A DNA stretch of 63,987 nucleotides, counting the filler, from Octopus bimaculoides (lineage: Eukaryota): NCBI RefSeq assembly GCF_001194135.2. It is 6 parts of 6 records of this genome, joined end to end, with 100 filler letters (N's around TTAATTAATTAA, not from the genome) between each part and the next. Parts side by side here need not be neighbours in the genome. Positions count along the whole stretch, not along the records: positions 7,897 to 25,629 come from NC_069007.1; 5 more parts are not named here. The stretch is one strand, 5' to 3'. The notes beneath the pieces were generated by a model. The model was not told the DNA's origin and ran no database searches. It worked only from the letters and a program-made list of their open reading frames with translations. Shown in pieces: positions 9,415 through 25,422 of the stretch (position 1 is the first letter of the stretch; the number at the start of each line of letters is the position of its first letter). The position numbers were made by a program, and so were the translations under genes.

Positions 9415-10536
9415 ATGGAAGATGTAAGCGAGAAAGACGATGGTGAGAAACAACATTTATCCAGTGAAACATTTACTAAACAAACATCATTAAACAAAAA
9501 TATTACTGATTATTGATGTGAGATTTGTGCGAAAAGATTTTCTTCGAAACACGAAGTCTTCACTCACAAACGAATACACAGAAGAGGAAAAGCCTATCAC
9601 TGCGAGACTTGTGGGAAATCATTTGTGTCTGGCAGTAAATTAACAATTCATAAAAGAACACACACTGGAGAAAAACCATTCCATTGTGAAGTATGTAGGA
9701 AATGTTTTGTCTCTAATGGTGATTTAAACAGACACAGAAGAATACATAAACGGGAGAAACTATTCGACTGCGAAGTATGTGGGAAGTGTTTTGTCTCCAA
9801 AAGATATCTAACGAGTCATAGAATAATACATTCTGGAGAAAAACGGCATCTTTGTCAAATATGCGGCAAATCGTTCTTTTGTAATTCAAAACTTGTTGTC
9901 CACGAAAGGACACATACCGGAGAAAAACCTTACCGTTGTGAGATATGTGGGAAATATTTTATTAGTAATGGTTATTTAGCATGTCACAAAAGAGTACACA
10001 CTGGAGAAAAGCTTCATTATTGTGAAATCTGTGGTAAATCTTACATTAATAATTCTAGTCTTGTTATCCACGTACGTAGTCATACTGGAGAAAAACCTTT
10101 CCACTGCAAATTCTGTGGAAGATCTTTCGTTTCTAACACTAATTTAGCAACACACAAGATAATCCACACTGGGCAGAAACTGTTCCACTGTGAAATATGT
10201 GGAAAGTCTTTTAATTATAATTCAAAACTTGTGATCCACCAAAGGATCCATACCGGAGAAAAACCATTCCGTTGTGAAGTTTGTGGAAAATCATTTGGAC
10301 ATAAGAGTAATTTAACAACTCATAAAAGAATCCACAATCAAGAAAACCGATTTCCTTGCAAAATCTGTGGAAAATCTTTTATTAATAACATTCATCTTGT
10401 TACGCACATACGTAGTCATACTAGAGAAAAACCATTTCACTGTAACGTATGTGGTAAATCATTTGTAACAAACAGTAACTTAACAAGACATAAATTGATA
10501 CACATTGAAGAGAATTCCCTTAATTCTAAAATATAA
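9415..10536 (+). pseudogene. C2H2 zinc-finger gene (12 fingers) with one premature TGA at 9514-9516
   Basis: ATG 9415 gives MEDVSEKDDGEKQHLSSET...NITDY*CEICAKRF; the frame then stays open to TAA 10536 with 12 CxxC-12-HxxxH fingers and TGEKP linkers. No in-frame ATG follows the stop; the track start at 9625 is GTG. Confidence 0.8.
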
Positions 10537-14405: not shown

Positions 14406-15440
14406 TCAGACAGTTATAGCCTCTCTCTCATGCAAACGTTTGTGAGCAAATAAATTACCTTGCTGAGAGAATACTTTGTCACAAATGTCACAGTGATATG
14501 GTTTTTCACCTGTGTGAGTTCGTTTATGGTTCAATAAATATGCATTCCGAGTGAATGCTTTGCCACAGAAATTACAACGATATGGTTTCTTTCCTGTGTG
14601 AATACGTTTATGGCTAGATAAATTACTATTTTGAGAGAAGGCCTTACCACAAATATCACACTGGTATGGTTTTTCCCCTCTGTGAATACGTTGGTGTCTA
14701 GATAGAGACAAACTGGTGGAGAAGATGCTGTCACAGATATCACAGTGGTATGGTCTTTCTCCAGTGTGAATACGTTTATGCTTGGATAAAGAACTTCCAA
14801 CAGAGAATGCATTACCACAGATATCACAGCGGTATGGCTTCTCCCCTGTGTGAATACGAATGTGTTTGGATAAATAATCATTGGCCGAGAAAGATTTACC
14901 ACAAACATCACAACAGTATGGTTTCTCTCCAGTGTGAATACGTTTGTGTTTAGTGAAAGAACTACTGTCAGAGAAAGTTTTTTCACAGATATCACAGTGG
15001 TATGGCTTCTCTCCTGTGTGAATACGTATATGCTTGGTTAAGTGACCACTTATGGAAAATGCTTTACCACAAATATCACAGTGATACGGTTTCTCTCCTG
15101 TGTGAAAACGTACATGGATCAATAAATGACTGTTCTGGGAGAAGGTTTTGCCACAAGTATCACAGTGATGTAGTTTCACTCTTGCGTGAATACGTTTGTG
15201 GTTCAGTAAACATTGATTTGTGGAGAATGTTTTATCGCATACGTCACAAACATAGGGTTCAGAATCAGTATGAAGAGATTTTTTATGTCTAATCAAAGAT
15301 GACCTTATTTGGAAAGACTTTGTACAGATGTCACAGACAAATGACATCTTCTTTGTATCATCCTCACTTTCATGGCAAACATCATTCTTCCCAAGCATAT
15401 TTTTCTTGCGCCTCTGATTCTTAATCTGTGTCTCTTCCAT
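14406..15440 (-). CDS. C2H2 zinc-finger protein, 344 aa, 11 fingers, no effector domain recognised
   Basis: Intact ATG-to-TGA ORF; repeated HCDICGKxFS...L..H.RIH-TGEKPY units after a 34-aa charged leader. Confidence 0.93.
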   Translation of the reverse strand: MEETQIKNQRRKKNMLGKNDVCHESEDDTKKMSFVCDICTKSFQIRSSLIRHKKSLHTDSEPYVCDVCDKTFSTNQCLLNHKRIHARVKLHHCDTCGKTFSQNSHLLIHVRFHTGEKPYHCDICGKAFSISGHLTKHIRIHTGEKPYHCDICEKTFSDSSSFTKHKRIHTGEKPYCCDVCGKSFSANDYLSKHIRIHTGEKPYRCDICGNAFSVGSSLSKHKRIHTGERPYHCDICDSIFSTSLSLSRHQRIHRGEKPYQCDICGKAFSQNSNLSSHKRIHTGKKPYRCNFCGKAFTRNAYLLNHKRTHTGEKPYHCDICDKVFSQQGNLFAHKRLHEREAITV

Positions 15441-15531
15441 AATCTCAAATCTTCTTCAAAACAAAAAAAACTACTTTTTTTTTTTTATAATTTTCAACAG
15501 AGAAATGTTTCTCGAAATAATTCCAATCAAG

Positions 15532-15667
15532 AGCATCCAGCTGTAGAAACTCTGCCAAATTAGATTGGAGCCTGGTGTTGCCATCCGGTTTCACCAGTCC
15601 TCAGTCAAATCGTCCAACCCATGCTAGCATGGAAAGCAGACATTAAACGATGATGATGATGATGATG
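15532..15667 (+). mobile_element. SINE 3' tail fragment ending in (GAT)n
   Basis: GCATCCAGCTGTAGAAACTCTGCCAAAT...CCAACCCATGCTAGCATGGAAAGC is nearly identical to 16366-16506. Confidence 0.8.
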
Positions 15668-16085
15668 AAACACTATGTTTTCTTCGAATGAGATTTTCGT
15701 CAAAGTCAAAAAGGTGTTCCAACTGTAAGGAAACATTTTAAAGATGTTTCGGTAAATCTGATTGTTACACCCATCAGTAAAATCCCAAAGAAGTTGTATA
15801 TGAACAGTCAATGTGAAGAATTAATTGCAACTCCCAAGAAATATGTCGCAGCAACAGAACTGAAGTGATATAAATATAAGATCTTCGATACCATTGGTAA
15901 CACCGTTTCTTAGTCTTCGCTACATCATTTCAATATGATCAGATACCCTGAAATATATAAAGATAAATGATAAAGCACCTGTATCCAAGATGGAGATGAG
16001 TACTAGCGTCTCATTTGGCACGCTTGATAATTGCTGAAAATTCTTGGGCATTAACCAATGGTAGCCTTGTTACCTTACAAATAAA

Positions 16086-16117
<32 letters not shown>

Positions 16118-16214
16118 GTGTGTATATAAAAAGTAAAAGAGTCAAAAGGAAGAATAAGTACGGTTAGGCAGCTTTTTAATTGCTACAAATGTTTTGATGA
16201 GGGTTCTGACTATG

Positions 16215-16506
16215 TTGACAGTGCCGCTGGACTGGCTCTTGTGCGGGCGGCACGTAAAATTCACTATTTTGAGTGTGGCCGTTGCCAGTACCGCCTGACT
16301 GGCCTTCGTGCAGGTGGCACGTAAAAGCACCCACTACACTCTTGGAGTGGTTGGCGTTAGGAAGGGCATCCAGCTGTAGAAACTCTGCCAAATCAGATTG
16401 GAGCCTGGTGTAGCCATCTGGTTTCACCAGTCCTCAGTCAAAGAGCCCAACCCATGCTAGCATGGAAAGCGGACGTTAAACGACAATGATGATGATGATG
16501 ATGATG
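16215..16506 (+). mobile_element. SINE/RTE-related 3' domain with (GAT)n tail
   Basis: TTGGCGTTAGGAAGGGCATCCAGCTGTAGAAAC resembles RTE-derived bipartite SINE modules; a microsatellite tail follows. Confidence 0.7.
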
Positions 16507-17594
16507 ACTTCAGTTAAAAAAAAACACAAAGTTAAATGTATGGAATTTTGAAAATTTTAGTTCAAATATAAAAATAAACTGTTAAATGTAACCGACATTT
16601 TTTTTTATCTAACATCATCAACTGAAGATACAGAACTCGTTAATACACAAGAGATTAGTACAAAACTGGAGTGTGATGATATAAGGGTTGTGACTTACAG
16701 ATTTTAATGATTCGTTTTATTTTTCTTCCATAGGAGGGTTTGTTTTTGTTTTTTAACATCCAATTGATTTGCACTTCAAAATAGGAGGGTGTTCTTTTCC
16801 TAATAATTTTTTAAAAAAAGGATGAGATGAAATAAATTTATGCTTTCTTTTATAGACAGTTTGATAGCAACCCTCCTCTATATCAATGCATATAATTCAA
16901 CAAATTTCTTCTCATTTTCTTTTTTAGTCATCTAAAATAAGCTTGTTTTTCTATCCTTTCCTCTGAGTATTTTCTCCCAAACCCCTCGCCCTTTCTGTGC
17001 ACACACACCTGAGATGGGTGGGGCACATTGGGTAATACAGTATTTTTGATTTTGAGAAAAGAAATAGAATTTTTTTTTACAAATGTTCACGATATTACGA
17101 AAACTATCAGCTAGTCAAATAACTTTCTCTAAATGCATTAAAAACATTATAACATATTCTGAACATTATTTCAGAAAATTATCTCCATTCTCTTTGGAGT
17201 ATGCGAAGGACAAATTTAGGTAGGGCAAAATAGGTAGAACAAAAAATAAATTTGCTTTGACTTTTTTAGAATTACATTTGAAAAAAGACAAATACACAAC
17301 AACATCCATCCTTAGACGTCAGAAAGATGAGAAATGTAGCAAAAATTTTAAATATCTTGGCCAAATGAAAGTTCTTGAGAAAATGGCAACTGATACAATA
17401 TTAATGAAACTCAACTACATCTAAAAGTTCAACATTCAATATTTATTTGGAGCAACTCAGACAAAACAAGTCATAATTAAGGTCAATATTTTTAGGCTGG
17501 TATTTTGGGCACCAGTTTTCATCACAAAGGTCACATGTGACCCTGGGATCACCCTTCATTCCTTTGTAAAGTTACCACAATCATTCATAATCGA

Positions 17595-18590
17595 TCACTT
17601 GTTGTCGTTCTCATCTTCTTTATCATCACCAGATGTTTTTTCTTTGTCACCAGATACTTTTTCTTTGTCGCCAGATACTTTTTCCTTGTCACCAGATGTT
17701 TTTTCTCTGCCACCAACTGCTTTTTCCTTGTCACCAGCTGCTTTTCCTTTGCCACTACTTGCTTTTTTTTTGACAGCAGATGTTTTTACTTTGTTACCAG
17801 ATGTTTTTGCTTTATCACCAGATGCCTTTTCTTTGTCACCAGATATTTTTTCTTTCTCTCCAGATGCTTTTTCTTTGTTTCCAGATACTTTCCCTTTGTC
17901 ACCAGATGTGTTTTCTCTGGAAAAAGATTCCCTTCTTTGACTTTTCCTATGTATCCTCTTTTGTGTTTTAGCGTTCTTCTCTTTACTTACATCCCTCTCC
18001 TCAGCTTTCACCTGTAAACACACGGGCTCATCTTCTATAGAAAGGACTTCACTTCGTGAAGGTTGAGCACATTTTCGTTTCCTCTTGGAATTCTGTGAGG
18101 CTTTTTTGTTTTCCTCAGTTGAGTTAGGAGCAATTGCAGAAAGGTCCTTCTGGGCAGCCTTGGTCAAGATATCTGGTTTGCCAGATGCAAGTTTCTGTGA
18201 CCAACGTCGTTTGAATGTTATCATCCAGTCTTTCCCTGGCATATTATTCTTAAAAACGGTTTTCCTGCCAGCTGTATCTAGATACTTCTTAACCATTGTT
18301 TGAATTTCCTTTGTTCCACAAGCCCAGCCAAAAAGAGATGACGAAAGTAAGAGCGCGTCAATAATATCTTTCTCCTCCGTCATTGAAAGCACACTAACGA
18401 AACGCCCGCTGCCAATTCTTTCAGTTTGATTGAGACCATTAATTCGTCTTCGAAGTGTCTCATATGGGACATTTGTTGCAGCTGCAGCATGTGAGACTGG
18501 TTTGCCTTTAGCTACCATGGCGCGAGCTTTCTTTATAGCTTCTTCACGATCTGCTGGAATGGGTCTCTTCCTGATATATTTACGCACCAT
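17595..18590 (-). CDS. pogo/CENP-B-type DNA-binding protein (HTH_psq + CENP-B HTH) lacking DDE, with Lys-rich 7-aa repeat tail, 331 aa
   Basis: AAAATNVPYETLRRRING (psq-like HTH) and LSMTEEKDII...PGKDWMITFKRRW (CENP-B-like HTH); intact ORF; splice-acceptor-like TTTCTTCTCTTTAACAG one base before the ATG; minus-strand AATAAA at 17447-17442. Confidence 0.8.
   Translation of the reverse strand: MVRKYIRKRPIPADREEAIKKARAMVAKGKPVSHAAAATNVPYETLRRRINGLNQTERIGSGRFVSVLSMTEEKDIIDALLLSSSLFGWACGTKEIQTMVKKYLDTAGRKTVFKNNMPGKDWMITFKRRWSQKLASGKPDILTKAAQKDLSAIAPNSTEENKKASQNSKRKRKCAQPSRSEVLSIEDEPVCLQVKAEERDVSKEKNAKTQKRIHRKSQRRESFSRENTSGDKGKVSGNKEKASGEKEKISGDKEKASGDKAKTSGNKVKTSAVKKKASSGKGKAAGDKEKAVGGREKTSGDKEKVSGDKEKVSGDKEKTSGDDKEDENDNK
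17620..17915 (-). repeat. Coding 21-bp minisatellite (about 13 units of SGDKEKx)
   Basis: Units related to TCACCAGATACTTTTTCTTTG on the + strand, all in frame. Confidence 0.9.
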
Positions 18591-18766
18591 GCTGTTAAAG
18601 AGAAGAAATTGTTCAAATTAGTCATTATTCATTTTGCCCCACTTTAGATATTTTTTTTTGTCTTTCTTTTTTTGAAAATTGCAAATTATCAAATTAGACA
18701 TAGCAATCTCAATTATAATCAGCTCAAAGTTGAGGAAAAAATTTAACTAAAAAAAAAAAAAGTACC

Positions 18767-18811
18767 AGGCACAGGAGTGGCTGTGTGGTAAGTAGCTTGC
18801 TTACCAATCAC
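18767..18811 (+). mobile_element. SINE family B head (cut by gap)
   Basis: AGGCACAGGAGTGGCTGTGTGGTAAGTAGCTTGCTTACC. Confidence 0.8.
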
Positions 18812-19246
18812 NNNNNNNNNNNNNNNNNNNNNNNNNNNNNNNNNNNNNNNNNNNNNNNNNNNNNNNNNNNNNNNNNNNNNNNNNNNNNNNNNNNNNNNNN
18901 NNNNNNNNNNNNNNNNNNNNNNNNNNNNNNNNNNNNNNNNNNNNNNNNNNNNNNNNNNNNNNNNNNNNNNNNNNNNNNNNNNNNNNNNNNNNNNNNNNNN
19001 NNNNNNNNNNNNNNNNNNNNNNNNNNNNNNNNNNNNNNNNNNNNNNNNNNNNNNNNNNNNNNNNNNNNNNNNNNNNNNNNNNNNNNNNNNNNNNNNNNNN
19101 NNNNNNNNNNNNNNNNNNNNNNNNNNNNNNNNNNNNNNNNNNNNNNNNNNNNNNNNNNNNNNNNNNNNNNNNNNNNNNNNNNNNNNNNNNNNNNNNNNNN
19201 NNNNNNNNNNNNNNNNNNNNNNNNNNNNGAAAAGATCATTTGCTTA

Positions 19247-19604
19247 TTCTTTTGTTTGCTACTGTCATTTGACTGCGGCCATGCTGGAGCACCACCTTCA
19301 GTTGAACAGTGTCCTCAGAATATATTTTTTGTAAGCCTAGTACTTATTCTATCGGTCTCTTTTGCCGAACCGCTAAGTGACGGGGACGTAAACACACCAG
19401 CTTCGGTTGTCAAGCTGTGGTAGTTTGGGGGACAAACAAACACACACACACACACACACACAAGACTTCTTTCAGTTTCCGTCTACCAAATCCACTCACA
19501 AGGTTTTGGTCGGCCCGAAGCTAGAAGACACCTTGCCCAAGGAGCACGCAGTGGGACTGAACCTGAAACCATGTGGTTGGTAAACAAGCTATTTACCACA
19601 CAGC
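19247..19604 (-). mobile_element. SINE family B, inverted relative to 18767
   Basis: Collinear with 11507-11897. Confidence 0.85.
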
Positions 19605-22600
19605 AACGTTGATATAGTTTTTGTAAGGTTGGGAGCAGTCGTAAAAATTATACTTCTCCTCAAAGTTAGGAATGCAGTAAAAACATCTCATCGTGTGCTC
19701 GGATCATGCAACAAAAATTTTGAGTATTTAGGTCAAATTAAAGTGGGGAAAGTGGATATGAAATTAACGAAACTCGACTCAATCGAGAAACTCAACGTAA
19801 AATGTTGTAGCGACTCTCATCTCGACATATTCATGCACCAATTTAATAAGCAATTACTGAAATTAATCGTGACCCATTTTACCCCGCTTCAGACGTAATT
19901 TTTTTGAAAACAGAAAATTATTAAATAAGAAATTAGTGTGGGAAATATTTGACTTGGAATCCAACAGAGAAAAGAATATTGATTATTAAGCACCAAAAAA
20001 TACACAGATATTTTAATTAGCAACCGTAATTATATCAGGTCAAAGTTGAGGGAAAAATTCTTGGAGAAAGGGGTACCTGTCACCTGACTGTTTCGACTTC
20101 AACAACTGTGCTAATATTATATTAGTAACTATTAACATTATAAACAAGGTGAAAGAAGCACTGAAGTATGTTGCATGTTTATGTACACATTCGACAACTT
20201 AAATATATTGTGTATGTGTGTGGATATATACATATATATATATATATATATAAATATATAGTATTATTATACTGTGGAACTTAATTTAATTTTAATTTTT
20301 AATAAATTGATTTTAATTGAGTTTTTACCTGTAATTTTGGATTTTATCCCTAATATTATTATTATATATATATATATATATATATATAATTGTAATGACC
20401 ATTATTTTTGTCTTGTTTTATTATACATATATGTGTATAATTATTTATATATACCACACACACATAGATATACATTTATATATATTATTAAAAGGAACTT
20501 TGTAGTATACGCACCTTGCTAAAAGTGGGACGTAACGTTCATTCGTGATGGAACATTAACAAACAATGTTGTCACTGTCAAAAACAGAAACAAAGATAAA
20601 ATACAGGAACCGGATGTGAGGCCGATATACTGCACGAAAGGAATTCTGGGTNNNNNNNNNNNNNNNNNNNNNNNNNNNNNNNNNNNNNNNNNNNNNNNNN
20701 NNNNNNNNNNNNNNNNNNNNNNNNNNNNNNNNNNNNNNNNNNNNNNNNNNNNNNNNNNNNNNNNNNNNNNNNNNNNNNNNNNNNNNNNNNNNNNNNNNNN
20801 NNNNNNNNNNNNNNNNNNNNNNNNNNNNNNNNNNNNNNNNNNNNNNNNNNNNNNNNNNNNNNNNNNNNNNNNNNNNNNNNNNNNNNNNNNNNNNNNNNNN
20901 NNNNNNNNNNNNNNNNNNNNNNNNNNNNNNNNNNNNNNNNNNNNNNNNNNNNNNNNNNNNNNNNNNNNNNNNNNNNNNNNNNNNNNNNNNNNNNNNNNNN
21001 NNNNNNNNNNNNNNNNNNNNNNNNNNNNNNNNNNNNNNNNNNNNNNNNNNNNNNNNNNNNNNNNNNNNNNNNNNNNNNNNNNNNNNNNNNNNNNNNNNNN
21101 NNNNNNNNNNNNNNNNNNNNNNNNNNNNNNNNNNNNNNNNNNNNNNNNNNNNNNNNNNNNNNNNNNNNNNNNNNNNNNNNNNNNNNNNNNNNNNNNNNNN
21201 NNNNNNNNNNNNNNNNNNNNNNNNNNNNNNNNNNNNNNNNNNNNNNNNNNNNNNNNNNNNNNNNNNNNNNNNNNNNNNNNNNNNNNNNNNNNNNNNNNNN
21301 NNNNNNNNNNNNNNNNNNNNNNNNNNNNAACCATTTATCATCATAAATATACAGGGATTAGCATTGAGTTGCTTCTCCAACATACTGAAAATTTAGAAAT
21401 AGCAGTCAAAGAACTACTGATTCTAAACTACAAATTTTTCTCTAAACGGATGGCGATATTTATGGCACACATAGAACAAAAAACCGGAGGGAAAAGCACA
21501 AACAAAACAAAACTGCCTTTAGTTAATTGGATACAAACGTTTCATGGTTAAGAGAATGAAATTACTCTATTCCGAATCTTCAGCCCAATATTCTGATAAA
21601 TTTGAAAGTGTCTCTAAAAAAATTCACGGTAATTTTTGGCCACGCGACACCAAAAACCAACAATATTATAAATTAACTACCAACAAAAATAATTGGTAAG
21701 CTAACTCAAAAAATCATCACCAAAATAGCAGAAAAAAACGAGTGAAGGTATGCAGACTCTTCAAGAATTGATCCTTTTGGTTATATTAATAATAATAAAG
21801 GAGTTATGCCGCAAAAACGTATATATTCAAATGAACATATTTATCTTCTTCAATATATATTTCAGTATAAAGAACTCATTAAGCGACTTAATAAATCAAA
21901 ATTTCTTTACACATCTTCAGGAAAAATAAATATAACATCAGAAAAACTACATTCGGTTTAAAAATACAAACCGTTCATGGTGAAAAAATTTGCTGTGCTT
22001 AGTCCACTGTTTCACACTAATACGATCACACATTCATAAACATATGTATATATTTACACACACACACATATATATATATATATAATGTTTAAATAATGAG
22101 ACAGACAGAAGATGGAGGATATGAGAATGTTTATTAATCTCTATAATTGTTTCAACCCATCATATGCCATATGATTTATTAACTAATATATATATATATG
22201 CATATTATCATCATCATTTCGTGTCTGTTGTTCATGCGGGCAAGAGTTAGACATATGCATATGTATAAACATAAATACATACATATATATATATATATGC
22301 ATATATACATACATACATATATGTACATACTTACATATATATGTATATACATATGCGTATATGGGCACAGACAACAAAGTTATTTTATTCCACACGGGTA
22401 GTAATATAGGAAAAATTGAAGTTGCAAATGCGCTGAGAATAGTTCAAATATTTTTTATTATCATATTTAAAGCTTTAACCGGTTTCACAGTTTACACTGA
22501 TTTTCAAGAAGTTCAAATTGAAAGACATGGCTTATGTCGCAGCTGTCTGCCCAAGGGCAGACCACAAATGTAATGGATATAAGTTGCTTACTTAAATACC

Positions 22601-23960: not shown

Positions 23961-25202
23961 TCATGTTTCACAGTTGAAAAACAGATTCCCTCCAACGTGC
24001 ATTTGTTTGTGCCTTGTTAAATTACTATTATATGCAAAAGATTTTCCACATACTTGACAGTAGAAAGGTTTGCCTCCAGTATGTATTATTTTATGTGCTG
24101 TTATATAACTACTGGCCAAAAAGGACTTGCCACATATATCACAGTGATAAGGTTTCTCTCCAGTGTGACTTCGTATATGGACAACAAGTTTTGAATTATT
24201 AATAAAGGTTTTCCCACAAAATTCACAGTAATGTAAGTTCTCTCCCGTGTGAATTCTTTTATGAGTTGTTAAATTACTATTATCACGAAAACATTTCCCA
24301 CACAATTCACAGCGATAGGGTTTTACTCCAGCATGTAACCTTTGGTGTTTTGTTAAATCACTGTTAGAGATAAAGGATTTCGCACATATTTCACAGTAGA
24401 AGGGCTTTTCTCCAGTATGGCTCCGCTTATGGATTGCAAGATGGGAATTCTGAGTAAAAGCTTTACCACATATCTCGCAGGGAAACGGTTTCTCTCCACT
24501 GTGTATTCTTTTATGTGTTGTTAAATTACTCTTATCGTGAAAAGACTTACCACATACATCACACTGAAACGGATTTCCTCTGTTGTGTATCTTCATGTGT
24601 GTTTTCAAATTACTACTGTTAACAAAACATTTCCCACATATTTCACAGGGATAAGGTTTTTCTTCTGTATGTGTTGTCTTGTGAACTACAAGATGGGAAT
24701 TCTGTGTAAAACTCTTCCCACATACTTCACAACGAAACGGCTTTTCTCCAGTATGGATTCTTTTATGCCTGGTCAAACAACTGCTAGAGATAAAACATTT
24801 CCCACATATTTCACAATGAAAAGGTTTTTTACCCGTGTGTATAATCTTATGTGCTGTTAAATAACTTTTAATGAAAAATGATTTTCCACATATTTCACAG
24901 TGATATGGTTTCACTCCAGTATGACTTCGTACGTGAATAATAAGTTTTGAATTATTATTAAAAGACTTTCCGCAAGTCTCACACTGAAACGATTTTTTCC
25001 TGTTGTGTATTTGTTTGTGAGCGAAAACTTCGTGTTCGGAAGAATATTTTTTCCCACAAATCTCACAACGATGATCAGTGATATTTCTGTGGGATGATGT
25101 TTCACTGGATAAACCTTGTTTCTTACCATTGTCTTCTTCTCTTACTGAATCCCTATTGTTAACAGCTGGGTTACAAGTCTCGAAGTCATTAACGTCTTCC
25201 AT
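23961..25202 (-). CDS. C2H2 zinc-finger protein, 413 aa from the first ATG, 13 fingers
   Basis: The track start at 25226 is TTG; the first ATG is at 25202 (MEDVNDF...). 13 fingers at 28-aa spacing; paralogue of 9415-10536. Confidence 0.93.
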   Translation of the reverse strand: MEDVNDFETCNPAVNNRDSVREEDNGKKQGLSSETSSHRNITDHRCEICGKKYSSEHEVFAHKQIHNRKKSFQCETCGKSFNNNSKLIIHVRSHTGVKPYHCEICGKSFFIKSYLTAHKIIHTGKKPFHCEICGKCFISSSCLTRHKRIHTGEKPFRCEVCGKSFTQNSHLVVHKTTHTEEKPYPCEICGKCFVNSSNLKTHMKIHNRGNPFQCDVCGKSFHDKSNLTTHKRIHSGEKPFPCEICGKAFTQNSHLAIHKRSHTGEKPFYCEICAKSFISNSDLTKHQRLHAGVKPYRCELCGKCFRDNSNLTTHKRIHTGENLHYCEFCGKTFINNSKLVVHIRSHTGEKPYHCDICGKSFLASSYITAHKIIHTGGKPFYCQVCGKSFAYNSNLTRHKQMHVGGNLFFNCET

Positions 25203-25422
25203 ATCAACTCTCGAAGGATTCTTCAAAAACTGGCAAAATTCCGTAAATACAATCTATTATGGTTCAGCTCCTCGTCTTGGAAATCGTGCGGTTCTAATTA
25301 AATGATTTAATTAGAAACATAACAAGTTCCCGGTGACATCGACAAGTTTTCCTCCGCGTCTAACTCATACCGGTGACACCAATGAAAAATCCCTTACATA
25401 ATATAATACAGTCAGAAACAAT
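25203..25422 (-). promoter_or_regulatory. Upstream/5'UTR region conserved with 9195-9414, including a perfect 25-bp palindrome
   Basis: TTCTAATTAAAT-G-ATTTAATTAGAA at 25292-25316; other shared blocks at 25365-25378 and 25409-25422. Confidence 0.7.

What the first reader, a model, noticed from the sequence alone, without database searches (positions are those of the whole stretch)
17595..18590. Intact pogo-derived ORF with the DDE core apparently removed in frame: candidate domesticated factor or KP-like repressor
The psq-HTH and CENP-B-HTH run to ...KPDILTKAAQKDLS, where pogo/Tigger/Fot1 transposases continue into the N.DETG catalytic domain. The frame instead continues into KRKRK..SRSEVLS..., which resembles the basic post-catalytic region of such transposases, and then a new repeat tail. 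It is open for 331 codons while every other TE here is broken, and has an acceptor-like site at the ATG and a downstream AATAAA. DNA-binding-only derivatives are established both as repressors (P-element KP) and as host genes (CENP-B, JRK).
Basis: partly seen in the sequence, partly recalled or inferred. Interest (0 to 1): 0.75.

Follow-up and report, generated by a model that had tools for sequence, protein, structure and literature searches.

The report
Octopus gene from a gutted pogo transposase
An Octopus bimaculoides gene made from a pogo-type transposon kept the DNA-binding head, lost the cutting domain, and has been held under strong selection since the split from O. sinensis (about 34 million years by a published estimate); this is a known kind of event, not a new one.

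Summary
Window 17595-18590 (- strand) is an intact 331-codon ORF.

- **Head:** residues 1-151 are homologous (40-44% identity) to the N-terminal two-HTH DNA-binding region of DDE_1 (pogo-type, DD35D) transposases.
- **Deletion:** the homology stops at ...KDLS. It resumes at once with the family's post-catalytic block (..SP....NSKRKRK....EVL.). About 267 residues carrying all three catalytic Asp are missing, in frame.
- **Tail:** a 21-nt x 13.9 repeat encodes SGDKEKx heptads.
- **New here:** the ancestral C-terminal 8-Cys zinc finger survives as a frameshifted relic just after the stop codon. The ancestral stop codon lies inside the AATAAA.

The genome is Octopus bimaculoides. O. sinensis has the same gene at a colinear locus (XP_029652752.1, named "axoneme-associated protein mst101(2)" in NCBI's protein record). 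It shares the deletion, the stop and the frameshift.

Between the two species the HTH region has 34 synonymous but only 2 nonsynonymous differences (dN/dS 0.013, p about 1e-21). The linker and tail evolve neutrally.

So this is a domesticated, DNA-binding-only transposase derivative. It is a new member of a known kind. Expression, target sites and orthologues in further species could not be tested, because the run-finder for public reads was closed.

The parts
17595..18590 (-). Intact ORF, 331 aa, colinear with a pogo-type transposase minus its catalytic core and C-terminal zinc finger
18138..18590 (-). aa 1-151: two-HTH DNA-binding region. This is the only part under strong purifying selection (34 synonymous, 2 nonsynonymous differences from O. 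sinensis)
18441..18548 (-). HTH 1 (helices aa 15-27, 32-39, 43-50), psq type
   Evidence: AF2 model, pLDDT 93-97 here; Pfam HTH_psq 16.8-18.2 bits on this protein, matched by 27/44 homologues; profile hit to LCoR 2cob at E=8.9e-6
18189..18383 (-). HTH 2 (helices aa 70-87, 93-107, 120-134), Tc5/CENP-B-like. The assignment is weak.
   Evidence: HTH_Tnp_Tc5 in 3/44 homologues; Foldseek 1hlv and 6pax, probability 0.82-0.87
18135..18143 (-). Deletion junction (aa 150-152, ..L-S-A..). The end of the HTH homology and the start of the post-catalytic homology meet here with no residues left over.
18030..18143 (-). aa 150-187: post-catalytic block of the transposase family (..AP.STEE....NSKRKRK.AQ..SEVL..). 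It contains the basic, NLS-like KRKRK at 18072-18086.
   Evidence: profile hit of 21.9 bits, 0/5000 shuffles reached it. The NLS role is inferred.
17907..18029 (-). aa 188-228: charged linker. The measured stretch that contains it (aa 152-228) evolves at about the neutral rate, dN/dS 0.86.
17626..17916 (-). 21-nt tandem array, 13.9 copies, encoding SGDKEKx heptads. O. sinensis has 25.7 copies. The + strand ORFs over it are by-products of the repeat.
17444..17594 (-). Relic of the ancestral C-terminal 8-Cys zinc finger, now untranslated. SIMNDCGNFTKE* is in the ORF frame after the stop; YKGMKGDPRVTCDLCDENWCPKYQPKNIDLNYDLFCLSCSK* is in frame +2. The stop and the frameshift are shared with O. sinensis.
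   Evidence: tblastn with P0011 E=8.6e-6 and with P0006 (Argonauta hians) E=2e-4; translations
17443..17448 (-). AATAAA. It overlaps the ancestral transposase stop codon (TAA at 17444-17446) and sits in a stretch that is nearly identical between the two species.
18591..18765 (-). 5' flank, about 94% identical to O. sinensis. It ends in a polypyrimidine tract plus AG (18592-18593), 1 nt before the ATG.
17036..17107 (.). 3' arm of an inverted repeat that frames the gene. It ends TA|CAGTATTTTTGATTTTGAG on the + strand. Possible terminal inverted repeat (TIR) relic.
   Evidence: Inconclusive.
19614..19679 (.). Upstream arm of the inverted repeat in this assembly. It is orthologous to a distal arm copy in O. 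sinensis (L003 7879-7924). The counterpart of the proximal arm (L003 9662-9727) probably lies in the N gap at 18812-19228.

Best explanation
What it is. This is a domesticated derivative of a pogo-superfamily (DDE_1, DD35D, Passer-like) transposon in Octopus bimaculoides.

Origin. An internally deleted element lost about 267 codons, and with them all three catalytic aspartates, in frame. It then lost its C-terminal zinc finger to a stop codon and a frameshift. It became fixed before O. bimaculoides and O. sinensis split, which a published estimate puts at about 34 million years ago.

What is preserved. The two-HTH DNA-binding head plus the adjacent basic KRKRK block (aa 1-177) is what selection keeps. 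The rest is a fast-changing, lysine- and acid-rich heptad tail.

How it most likely works (inferred, not shown). The protein enters the nucleus through the basic block. It binds specific DNA through the paired-like HTH pair, most plausibly sequences descended from the ends of its own transposon family, fragments of which lie beside the gene. Without any cutting activity it would then act as a repressor, a competitor or a recruiter.
For: Shown.
- The ORF is intact.
- aa 1-151 are homologous to the N-termini of DDE_1 transposases, with 724 relatives. Every full-length relative scanned (8) scores 80-95 bits on DDE_1, and five of the seven whose triad could be located keep D/D/D intact, all with 35 residues between the second and third position.
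- aa 150-183 match the family's post-catalytic block at 21.9 bits; none of 5000 shuffles reached that.
- The zinc-finger relic lies after the stop codon.
- The AF2 model has pLDDT 85 and shows two three-helix bundles. Its best fold matches are the Pax paired domain, the CENP-B DNA-binding domain and the Tc3 DNA-binding domain.
- The family profile hits the LCoR psq-HTH structure.
- The O. sinensis orthologue XP_029652752.1 sits at a colinear locus with the same deletion, stop and frameshift.
- Nei-Gojobori dN/dS on aa 1-151 is 0.013: 34 synonymous against 2 nonsynonymous differences, Fisher p=7e-22. The nonsynonymous divergence of 0.6% compares with about 5-13% in the adjacent non-coding DNA.
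- Both 90%-identity protein clusters hold one member on one contig.
- No DDE fragment lies within 10 kb either side in either species.

From the literature. The split is dated at about 34 Mya (bioRxiv 10.1101/2023.05.16.540928).
Against: - There is no expression evidence.
- Only two species were compared, so selection is measured on a single pair.
- The linker and tail look neutral (dN/dS 0.86 and about 1.4). Their staying open has a chance of about 0.12, so only aa 1-177 can be claimed as functional.
- Synonymous divergence in the HTH region (pS 0.33) is higher than in the flanks. CpG decay explains only about half of that. Gene conversion from an unseen paralogue is not excluded.
- DNA-level copy number in the whole genome was not measurable with these tools.
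- DNA binding, nuclear localisation and the targets are all inferred.
Confidence: 0.75

Rival explanations
1. It is a dead, internally deleted transposon copy. The element became fixed by drift, and the ORF is open by chance and does nothing.
For: - The linker and tail evolve neutrally, and their openness is not significant (probability about 0.12).
- The C-terminal zinc finger is visibly decaying.
- Inverted-repeat arms and a second copy without coding sequence lie at the locus.
- There are no expression data.
Against: - In aa 1-151 there are 34 synonymous but only 2 nonsynonymous differences across about 34 My. Under neutrality about 28 of the 36 differences should be nonsynonymous (binomial p=7e-20).
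- All residues that are invariant across the family's HTH region are kept.
Confidence: 0.05
2. The ORF is one exon of a larger gene. An upstream exon would splice into the AG just before the ATG, or alternative splicing would join the HTH head to other domains such as BTB or C2H2 fingers. In that case the 331-aa protein is not the real product.
For: - A conserved polypyrimidine tract plus AG lies 1 nt before the ATG.
- The gene sits among C2H2 zinc-finger ORFs on the same strand.
- Fusions of octopus CENPB/psq-type genes to BTB are reported (PMC10027918).
Against: - The ATG and MVRKY... are the ancestral transposase start, shared with relatives. An upstream exon would therefore most likely be untranslated.
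- The HTH head and the post-catalytic block are contiguous in one exon.
- O. sinensis has no zinc-finger ORF within 10 kb of its copy.
- The public O. sinensis protein record has the same start and the same stop.
Confidence: 0.12
3. The low dN/dS reflects selection at the level of the transposon or a paralogue family. The two loci would then be members of a still-mobile or gene-converting family of DNA-binding-only elements (true KP-type elements), not a stationary host gene.
For: - Synonymous divergence in codons 26-100 is well above that of the flanks.
- Element-derived fragments are duplicated upstream.
- DDE-less gene models exist for relatives in a jellyfish and a scale insect.
Against: - Colinear unique blocks lie on both sides of the gene in the two species.
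- The stop, the frameshift and the first-Cys loss in the relic are shared.
- The protein clusters are single-member and single-contig, unlike the multi-copy relatives, which have 4-8 members.
Confidence: 0.08

Closest known systems
DNA-binding-module co-option of Tc1/mariner and pogo transposases (Drosophila CG4570 and cag; the pipsqueak HTH family; vertebrate LCoR/LCORL HTH)
   Same: Only the N-terminal HTH module of the transposase is kept and is under purifying selection, and the catalytic domain is gone. The first HTH is psq type, and the family profile hits the LCoR HTH structure 2cob. This pathway is described as one of two routes of domestication in PMC13548663.
   Different: It is an independent event in octopods, from a DD35D DDE_1 family. 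It keeps both HTHs and the post-catalytic basic block, is not fused to BTB or a homeodomain, and carries a heptad-repeat tail. Relics of the lost zinc finger, and possibly of the terminal repeats, are still visible, so it looks comparatively young.
P-element KP repressor (an internally deleted element that encodes a DNA-binding-only protein)
   Same: An in-frame internal deletion removes the catalytic region and leaves the DNA-binding N-terminus. The gene is still framed by inverted-repeat arms.
   Different: KP elements are mobile and multi-copy, belong to a different superfamily (THAP DNA-binding domain), and have demonstrated repression. Here the locus is stationary and orthologous in two species. 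No repression, and no active cognate element, has been shown.
Vertebrate pogo-derived genes CENPB, JRK/JRKL, TIGD1-7, POGK and POGZ (POGK and POGZ are Passer/DD35D-derived)
   Same: The source is the pogo superfamily, relatives have DD35D spacing as Passer does, and the DNA-binding domain is under strong purifying selection (PMC7386202).
   Different: According to that paper these genes derive from complete transposase genes and keep the DDE_1 domain. This octopus gene has lost it entirely.
Octopus 'HTH-Psq' and 'CENPB' TE-derived transcription factors catalogued by Mukherjee and Moroz 2023 (PMC10027918)
   Same: Same species and same general class: 12 HTH-Psq and 7 CENPB genes are listed for O. 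bimaculoides.
   Different: Whether this gene is in that list was not checked. Its HTH_psq score is below Pfam's cut-off, so it may have been missed. That survey reported no one-to-one homologues in related species, whereas this gene has one in O. sinensis.

Membership tests
pogo-superfamily (DDE_1) transposase lineage: descent | N-terminal DNA-binding region homologous to that of DDE_1 transposases | tested here: met
   43% identity over aa 1-151 to P0002 (E=1e-32). There are 724 phmmer relatives, 67 of them at E<=1e-10. The full-length ones carry DDE_1 at 80-95 bits.
pogo-superfamily (DDE_1) transposase lineage: descent | HTH_psq or CENP-B_N domain followed by an HTH_Tnp_Tc5 domain, by Pfam | tested here: inconclusive
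   On this protein HTH_psq scores 16.8-18.2 bits, below the cut-off of 20.4, and there is no Tc5 hit. Among 44 homologues, HTH_psq matches 27, CENP-B_N matches 4 and HTH_Tnp_Tc5 matches 3. The family profile hits LCoR 2cob at E=8.9e-6. Foldseek matches to 6pax and 1hlv have E about 0.1.
pogo-superfamily (DDE_1) transposase: active enzyme | DDE_1 catalytic domain with a D-D-D triad (DD35D in the relatives) | tested here: not met
   There is no DDE_1 hit. tblastn with 9 relatives finds no DDE fragment within 10 kb either side in either species. The missing segment corresponds to P0007 aa ~148-414, which holds D178, D286 and D322.
pogo-superfamily element | Terminal inverted repeats flanked by a TA target-site duplication | tested here: inconclusive
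   Inverted-repeat arms frame the gene in both species: score 65 against a shuffle maximum of 51, and score 52 reached by 1 of 500 shuffles. The 3' end reads TA|CAGT. However, the upstream arm is duplicated, its similarity runs past the putative terminus, and the proximal arm falls in an assembly gap.
Domesticated (exapted) transposase gene | Orthologous copy at a syntenic locus in another species | tested here: met
   The O. sinensis locus L003 is colinear on both sides and shares the deletion, the stop and the relic frameshift. Only one other species was available.
Domesticated (exapted) transposase gene | Purifying selection on the coding sequence | tested here: met
   dN/dS is 0.013 on aa 1-151 (p=7e-22). 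It is not met for aa 152-331, where dN/dS is 0.86-1.4.
Domesticated (exapted) transposase gene | Single copy, no longer mobile | tested here: inconclusive
   The 90%-identity protein clusters hold 1 member on 1 contig. No whole-genome DNA search was possible. Homologues between 50% and 90% identity would be hidden inside the 50% cluster.
Domesticated (exapted) transposase gene | Transcribed and translated | not testable with these tools
A literature search for the public protein name found nothing.
KP-type transposition repressor | Internal deletion leaves a DNA-binding-only protein in frame | tested here: met
KP-type transposition repressor | Represses a cognate active element present in the same genome | not tested
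   No closer full-length relative than about 40-55% identity was seen. The nearest one from a named octopod is Argonauta hians P0006, at 41%.
CENPB/JRK/TIGD/POGK/POGZ-type pogo-derived genes | Whole transposase retained, including the DDE_1 domain | tested here: not met
   DDE_1 is absent. The criterion comes from PMC7386202.

The most novel reading that the evidence does not exclude
The locus is a KP-type repressor caught in the act of becoming a host gene. An internally deleted Passer-like pogo element, still framed by relics of its own terminal repeats and sitting next to a copy without coding sequence, would make an HTH-only protein that binds the dispersed ends (MITEs) of its family across octopod genomes. 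The protein would then serve either as heritable immunity against that family or as the hub of a regulatory network wired by transposon ends. The excess of synonymous change in the HTH region would come from exchange with unseen sister copies.
Probability: 0.15. Interest if true: 0.6.

Novelty: new member of a known kind. Interest (0 to 1): 0.4.

Why it matters
It adds a clear invertebrate case to the DNA-binding-only route of transposase domestication. Every step can still be read in the DNA: the in-frame loss of the DDE core, a premature stop, a decaying zinc-finger relic in the 3' UTR, an ancestral stop codon reused inside the poly(A) signal, and possible terminal-repeat relics.

It corrects a misleading public name for the O. 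sinensis orthologue ("axoneme-associated protein mst101(2)"), which probably comes from the low-complexity tail alone.

It gives cephalopod biologists a concrete candidate DNA-binding factor, with a defined 177-residue functional core, that can be tested for targets among transposon-derived sequences.

It does not change any general view. Both pogo-derived HTH genes and KP-like derivatives are well established.

Tried and rejected
**RNA evidence.** No read mapping, splice-junction check or expression check was therefore done, and no other tool was tried in its place.

**More orthologues or paralogues.**
- The search for homologous proteins was used three times.
- It never returned the 98%-identical O. 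sinensis protein that the exhaustive search found.
- Once it did not even return the query itself.
- Its negative results are therefore not evidence of absence.

**Global alignment.** A MAFFT global alignment with full-length relatives smeared the C-terminal half of the window protein across the DDE domain. I replaced it with a local profile of the post-catalytic block.

**Searches that found nothing.**
- phmmer of the single sequence against PDB.
- Rfam over 15500-20500 on both strands.
- A literature search for the public protein name.

**Pfam LbR_Ice_bind hit on the tail.** I rejected it as a low-complexity artefact. The "mst101(2)" name looks like the same kind of artefact; I did not compare the protein with Mst101(2) itself.

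**Fusion to the neighbouring zinc-finger ORF.** I rejected a transcript that fuses this ORF to the downstream C2H2 ORF, because O. sinensis has no such ORF within 10 kb of its copy.

**TIR and TSD call.** At first I read the upstream arm at 19614-19679, with its TA, as the element's 5' terminal repeat and target-site duplication. Searches showed that the arm is duplicated in O. sinensis and that the similarity runs past the supposed terminus. I downgraded the call to inconclusive.

**Species of locus L002.** A test for the octopus SINE in L002 was negative and uninformative.
Full report
**1. What is in the sequence**

Window 17595..18590 on the - strand is an open frame of 331 codons that starts at an ATG. 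Its last third is a 21-nt tandem array (17626-17916, 13.9 copies, 77% matches). The array encodes heptads of the form S-G-D-K-E-K-x. The + strand ORFs that overlap the array are by-products of the repeat.

The protein is on record for Octopus bimaculoides assembly GCA_001194135.2, chromosome CM046627.1, near 18.49 Mb.

The large ORFs around it are intact C2H2 zinc-finger genes at 9625-10536 (+), 14406-15440 (-) and 23961-25226 (-). They are not broken transposons. Fragments of the common octopus SINE sit on either side of the assembly gap at 18812-19228.

**2. The N-terminus is a transposase DNA-binding head**

On the protein alone Pfam gives only a sub-threshold HTH_psq match: 16.8 bits against a cut-off of 20.4, over aa 16-58. 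There is no DDE_1 match.

An exhaustive phmmer search with aa 1-166 against 1.84 billion representative proteins found 724 proteins at E<=1e-3 and 67 at E<=1e-10.

The full-length relatives are P0007, P0011, P0162, P0019, P0023, P0030, P0035 and P0006 (P0006 comes from Argonauta hians). All begin M-[VP]-R-x-Y like the window protein, and all carry Pfam DDE_1 at 80-95 bits.

I could locate the catalytic triad in seven relatives. Five keep D/D/D intact, at about residues 178, 286 and 322 (203, 312 and 348 in P0019). All seven have 35 residues between the second and third position. According to PMC7386202 that spacing is typical of the Passer and Fot families of the pogo superfamily. I did not build a tree, so "Passer-like" is a lead and not a placement.

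BLASTP to the DDE_1 protein P0002 gives 43% identity over aa 1-151 (E=1e-32), and the match ends at ...KDLS.

The type of each HTH was checked at family level.
- Of 44 N-terminal homologues, 27 match HTH_psq (best 2e-10), 4 match CENP-B_N and 3 match HTH_Tnp_Tc5.
- A profile of the 44 hits the solved psq-type HTH of human LCoR (2cob, E=8.9e-6) and Drosophila CG11849 (2elh, E=9e-4).
- An AlphaFold2 model of aa 1-160 built on that alignment has mean pLDDT 85. It shows two three-helix bundles (aa 15-50 and 70-134) joined by a flexible linker.
- Its best Foldseek matches in the PDB are the Pax6 paired domain (6pax), the CENP-B DNA-binding domain on DNA (1hlv), Pax5 (1k78) and the Tc3 bipartite domain (1u78). 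The E-values are weak (about 0.1, probability 0.82-0.87), as expected when two domains are joined flexibly.

The first HTH is therefore securely psq type. The second is probably Tc5/CENP-B type.

**3. The catalytic core is cleanly missing**

In full-length relatives the DDE domain is followed by a conserved block of the form ..A-I-I-x-x-[LI]-S-P......N-S-K-K-R-R-x-R-V-Q...G-E-V-L-T-S. I built a profile from this block in 17 relatives.

The profile matches the window protein at aa 150-183 (LSAIAPNSTEENKKASQNSKRKRKCAQPSRSEVL) with 21.9 bits. It matches the O. sinensis protein with 23-25 bits. None of 5000 shuffles of aa 140-230 reached the real score; the highest was 11.1.

The match starts at the residue where the HTH homology ends, so no residues are left unaccounted for. 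Measured against P0007, the missing segment is about aa 148-414, roughly 267 residues, with all three catalytic aspartates.

tblastn with nine relatives finds no DDE-coding fragment anywhere in the 17.7-kb piece, nor within 10 kb either side of the gene in either octopus species.

**4. New: the lost C-terminus is still visible after the stop codon**

Several relatives end in an 8-Cys zinc finger. One example is P0011...ICLNCGQIWSTYEGTDSEVWLICDICDKYVCPKCIPPDTDLSEDYFCMDCVK. The Argonauta protein P0006 ends in the same way.

tblastn finds this finger just downstream of the window ORF's stop codon, with E=8.6e-6 for P0011 and E=2e-4 for P0006.

Translation gives two pieces.
- SIMNDCGNFTKE*, in the ORF's own frame right after the TGA (17556-17594).
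- YKGMKGDPRVTCDLCDENWCPKYQPKNIDLNYDLFCLSCSK*, in frame +2 (17444-17568).

O. sinensis shares the premature TGA, the frameshift and the loss of the first Cys. Each species has also added private damage: a 4-nt deletion in O. sinensis and a Cys-to-Tyr change in O. bimaculoides.

So the finger was already dead before the two species split and has been decaying since. The ORF is colinear with the ancestral transposase from its start codon onward. The order is HTH-HTH, missing DDE, basic block, Lys-rich region (now an expanded heptad array), acidic stretch, a new stop codon, then the dead zinc finger.

**5. It is a conserved gene, not a decaying copy**

The best hit of the exhaustive search is a 414-aa protein, 98% identical over aa 1-166. 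It is XP_029652752.1 of Octopus sinensis, named "axoneme-associated protein mst101(2)". That name probably reflects only the Lys-rich repeat, because the rest of the protein is a transposase-derived HTH head.

Its locus (L003, CM016886.1 at 9.10 Mb) is colinear with the window locus. There are unique matching blocks upstream (L001 8347-8948) and downstream (L001 11593-12084 and 12378-12478).

The O. sinensis protein has the same junction and the same stop. It differs mainly in the repeat count, 25.7 copies against 13.9.

Nei-Gojobori counts between the two species:

| Region | Synonymous differences | Nonsynonymous differences | dN | dS | dN/dS |
|---|---|---|---|---|---|
| aa 1-151 (HTH head) | 34 | 2 | 0.006 | 0.43 | 0.013 |
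| aa 152-228 (linker) | 5 | 17 | | | 0.86 |
| tail (repeat alignment unreliable) | | | | | about 1.4 |

- For aa 1-151 the excess of synonymous change gives Fisher p=7e-22. Seeing 2 or fewer nonsynonymous changes out of 36 has binomial p=7e-20.
- Of the 36 differences in the head, 32 are at third codon positions.
- Within the linker, aa 152-177 (the conserved block and KRKRK) have a single change.
- Adjacent non-coding DNA differs by about 5-13%. Nonsynonymous sites of the head (0.6%) are therefore at least ten-fold slower than any local neutral yardstick.
- The two lineages are reported to have split about 34 Mya (10.1101/2023.05.16.540928, citing Jiang et al. 2022).
- The 90%-identity clusters of both proteins have one member on one contig. 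Transposon relatives in the same collection show 4-8 members.

**6. What is not under visible selection**

After the 55 substitutions observed, the linker plus tail stays free of stop codons in about 12% of simulations. Changes in repeat number are automatically in frame. I therefore claim function only for the HTH head and the basic block. The tail may matter through its composition (charged, disordered), or it may not matter at all.

**7. Relics of the element's ends (tentative)**

In O. sinensis an inverted repeat frames the gene. Its arms are L003 9662-9727 and 11704-11771, and its score is 65 against a shuffle mean of 31 and maximum of 51.

In the window the 3' arm is at 17036-17107. On the + strand it begins TA|CAGTATTTTTG, which resembles the TA target-site duplication and CAGT terminus I recall as typical of pogo/Tigger ends; this was not checked against a source. 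An upstream arm lies at 19614-19679. The pair scores 52, a value reached by 1 of 500 shuffles.

Three points weaken a terminal-repeat reading.
- The upstream arm in the window is orthologous to a second, more distal arm copy in O. sinensis (L003 7879-7924).
- The similarity between the arm copies runs about 16 nt past the supposed terminus.
- The counterpart of the proximal arm probably lies in the N gap at 18812-19228.

The stretch upstream of the gene (window about 19700-20060) is a mosaic of short pieces similar to the gene's own flanks.
- 19706-19744 resembles 17334-17372.
- 19899-19933 resembles 18667-18701.
- 20034-20059 resembles 18718-18743.

This mosaic amounts to a second partial copy of the element without coding sequence, and both species have it. 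The gene's flanks are therefore element-derived. This fits an origin as a whole, internally deleted transposon rather than a retrocopy. The exact ends and the target-site duplication are not established.

**8. Mechanism**

Shown:
- the protein's architecture;
- loss of catalysis;
- selection on the DNA-binding head;
- orthology between the two species.

Inferred:
- nuclear import through KRKRK;
- sequence-specific DNA binding by the paired-like HTH pair, as in CENP-B, Pax, Tc3 and LCoR;
- targets descended from the family's terminal repeats;
- a non-catalytic outcome such as repression, competition or recruitment.

Whether selection favours transposon control (KP-like) or a host regulatory role cannot be decided here.

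**9. Comparison with what is known**

Co-option of only the DNA-binding module of Tc1/mariner or pogo transposases is an established route. Examples are Drosophila CG4570, cag and toy in PMC13548663, and the pipsqueak family and LCoR.

Pogo-derived HTH-Psq and CENPB genes have been counted in O. bimaculoides (PMC10027918).

The vertebrate pogo-derived genes (CENPB, JRK, TIGD, POGK, POGZ) differ in that they keep the DDE_1 domain (PMC7386202). KP elements differ in being mobile and in belonging to another superfamily.

This is therefore a new member of a known kind. Its value lies in how completely the steps of its formation can still be read.

**10. Unexplained**

Synonymous divergence in the HTH head (pS 0.33, concentrated in codons 26-100) exceeds that of the flanks and the linker (about 0.05-0.13).
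- Half of the differences lie in a CpG context, with each species keeping CpGs that the other has lost.
- The changes are asymmetric. About 25 sites are A/T in O. bimaculoides and G/C in O. sinensis, against 8 the other way. GC3 is 0.36 against 0.46.
- CpG decay of a CpG-rich ancestor explains part of the excess.
- Gene conversion from an unseen paralogue, or biased gene conversion, remains possible.

This does not touch the deficit of nonsynonymous change.

**11. Limits**

- Only one other species could be compared.
- The word-indexed protein search was unreliable for this query.
- No whole-genome DNA search of octopus assemblies was available.

Noticed in passing
window 9625-10536 (+), 14406-15440 (-), 23961-25226 (-): Three long intact ORFs encode arrays of C2H2 zinc fingers, so the gene sits inside one of the octopus C2H2 clusters. 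O. sinensis has no such ORF within 10 kb of its copy.
   Followed up: partly
L003 10001-11245 (O. sinensis, XP_029652752.1): The orthologue's public name is 'axoneme-associated protein mst101(2)'. That name probably comes from the Lys-rich heptad tail alone. The N-terminal 187 residues are a pogo-type transposase head and post-catalytic block.
   Followed up: yes
window 18138-18590, codons 26-100 above all: Synonymous divergence from O. sinensis (pS 0.33) is several-fold above that of the flanking non-coding DNA. Half of the differences are in a CpG context. O. sinensis has the higher GC3 (0.46 against 0.36).
   Followed up: partly
window about 19700-20060; L003 7673-7925: Upstream of the gene lies a short mosaic of pieces similar to the gene's own 5' and 3' flanks, plus another arm of the inverted repeat. 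This is a second partial copy of the element without coding sequence, and both species have it.
   Followed up: partly
window 18777-18811 and 19573-19607 (either side of the N gap at 18812-19228); also L001 16710-16732 and 17915-17937: These are copies of the abundant octopus SINE (GTGGCTGTGTGGTAAGTAGCTTGCTTACC...). One was inserted about 190 nt upstream of the ATG in O. bimaculoides but not in O. sinensis.
   Followed up: partly
L003 11775-13279: O. sinensis carries about 1.5 kb of extra DNA, including a SINE, starting exactly where the 3' inverted-repeat arm ends. O. bimaculoides has 39 nt at that point.
   Followed up: no
relatives P0061 (Sanderia malayensis) and P0076 (Parthenolecanium corni): Two gene models in a jellyfish and a scale insect also run from the second HTH straight into the post-catalytic block, with no DDE domain. 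Either DDE-less derivatives recur in this family, or gene predictors splice out decayed cores.
   Followed up: partly
relatives P0023, and P0007, P0011 and P0006: Full-length family members carry different C-terminal additions: an OTU cysteine-protease domain in P0023 (Pfam 35.9 bits), and an 8-Cys PHD/RING-like finger in the others. No Pfam model caught the finger.
   Followed up: no
L002 8001-9175: P0002, the nearest DDE-bearing relative in the word-indexed search, is itself a frameshifted copy. It lies among LINE-type (RVT_1, Exo_endo_phos) and IS1595-like ORFs in an unidentified ENA eukaryote assembly.
   Followed up: no
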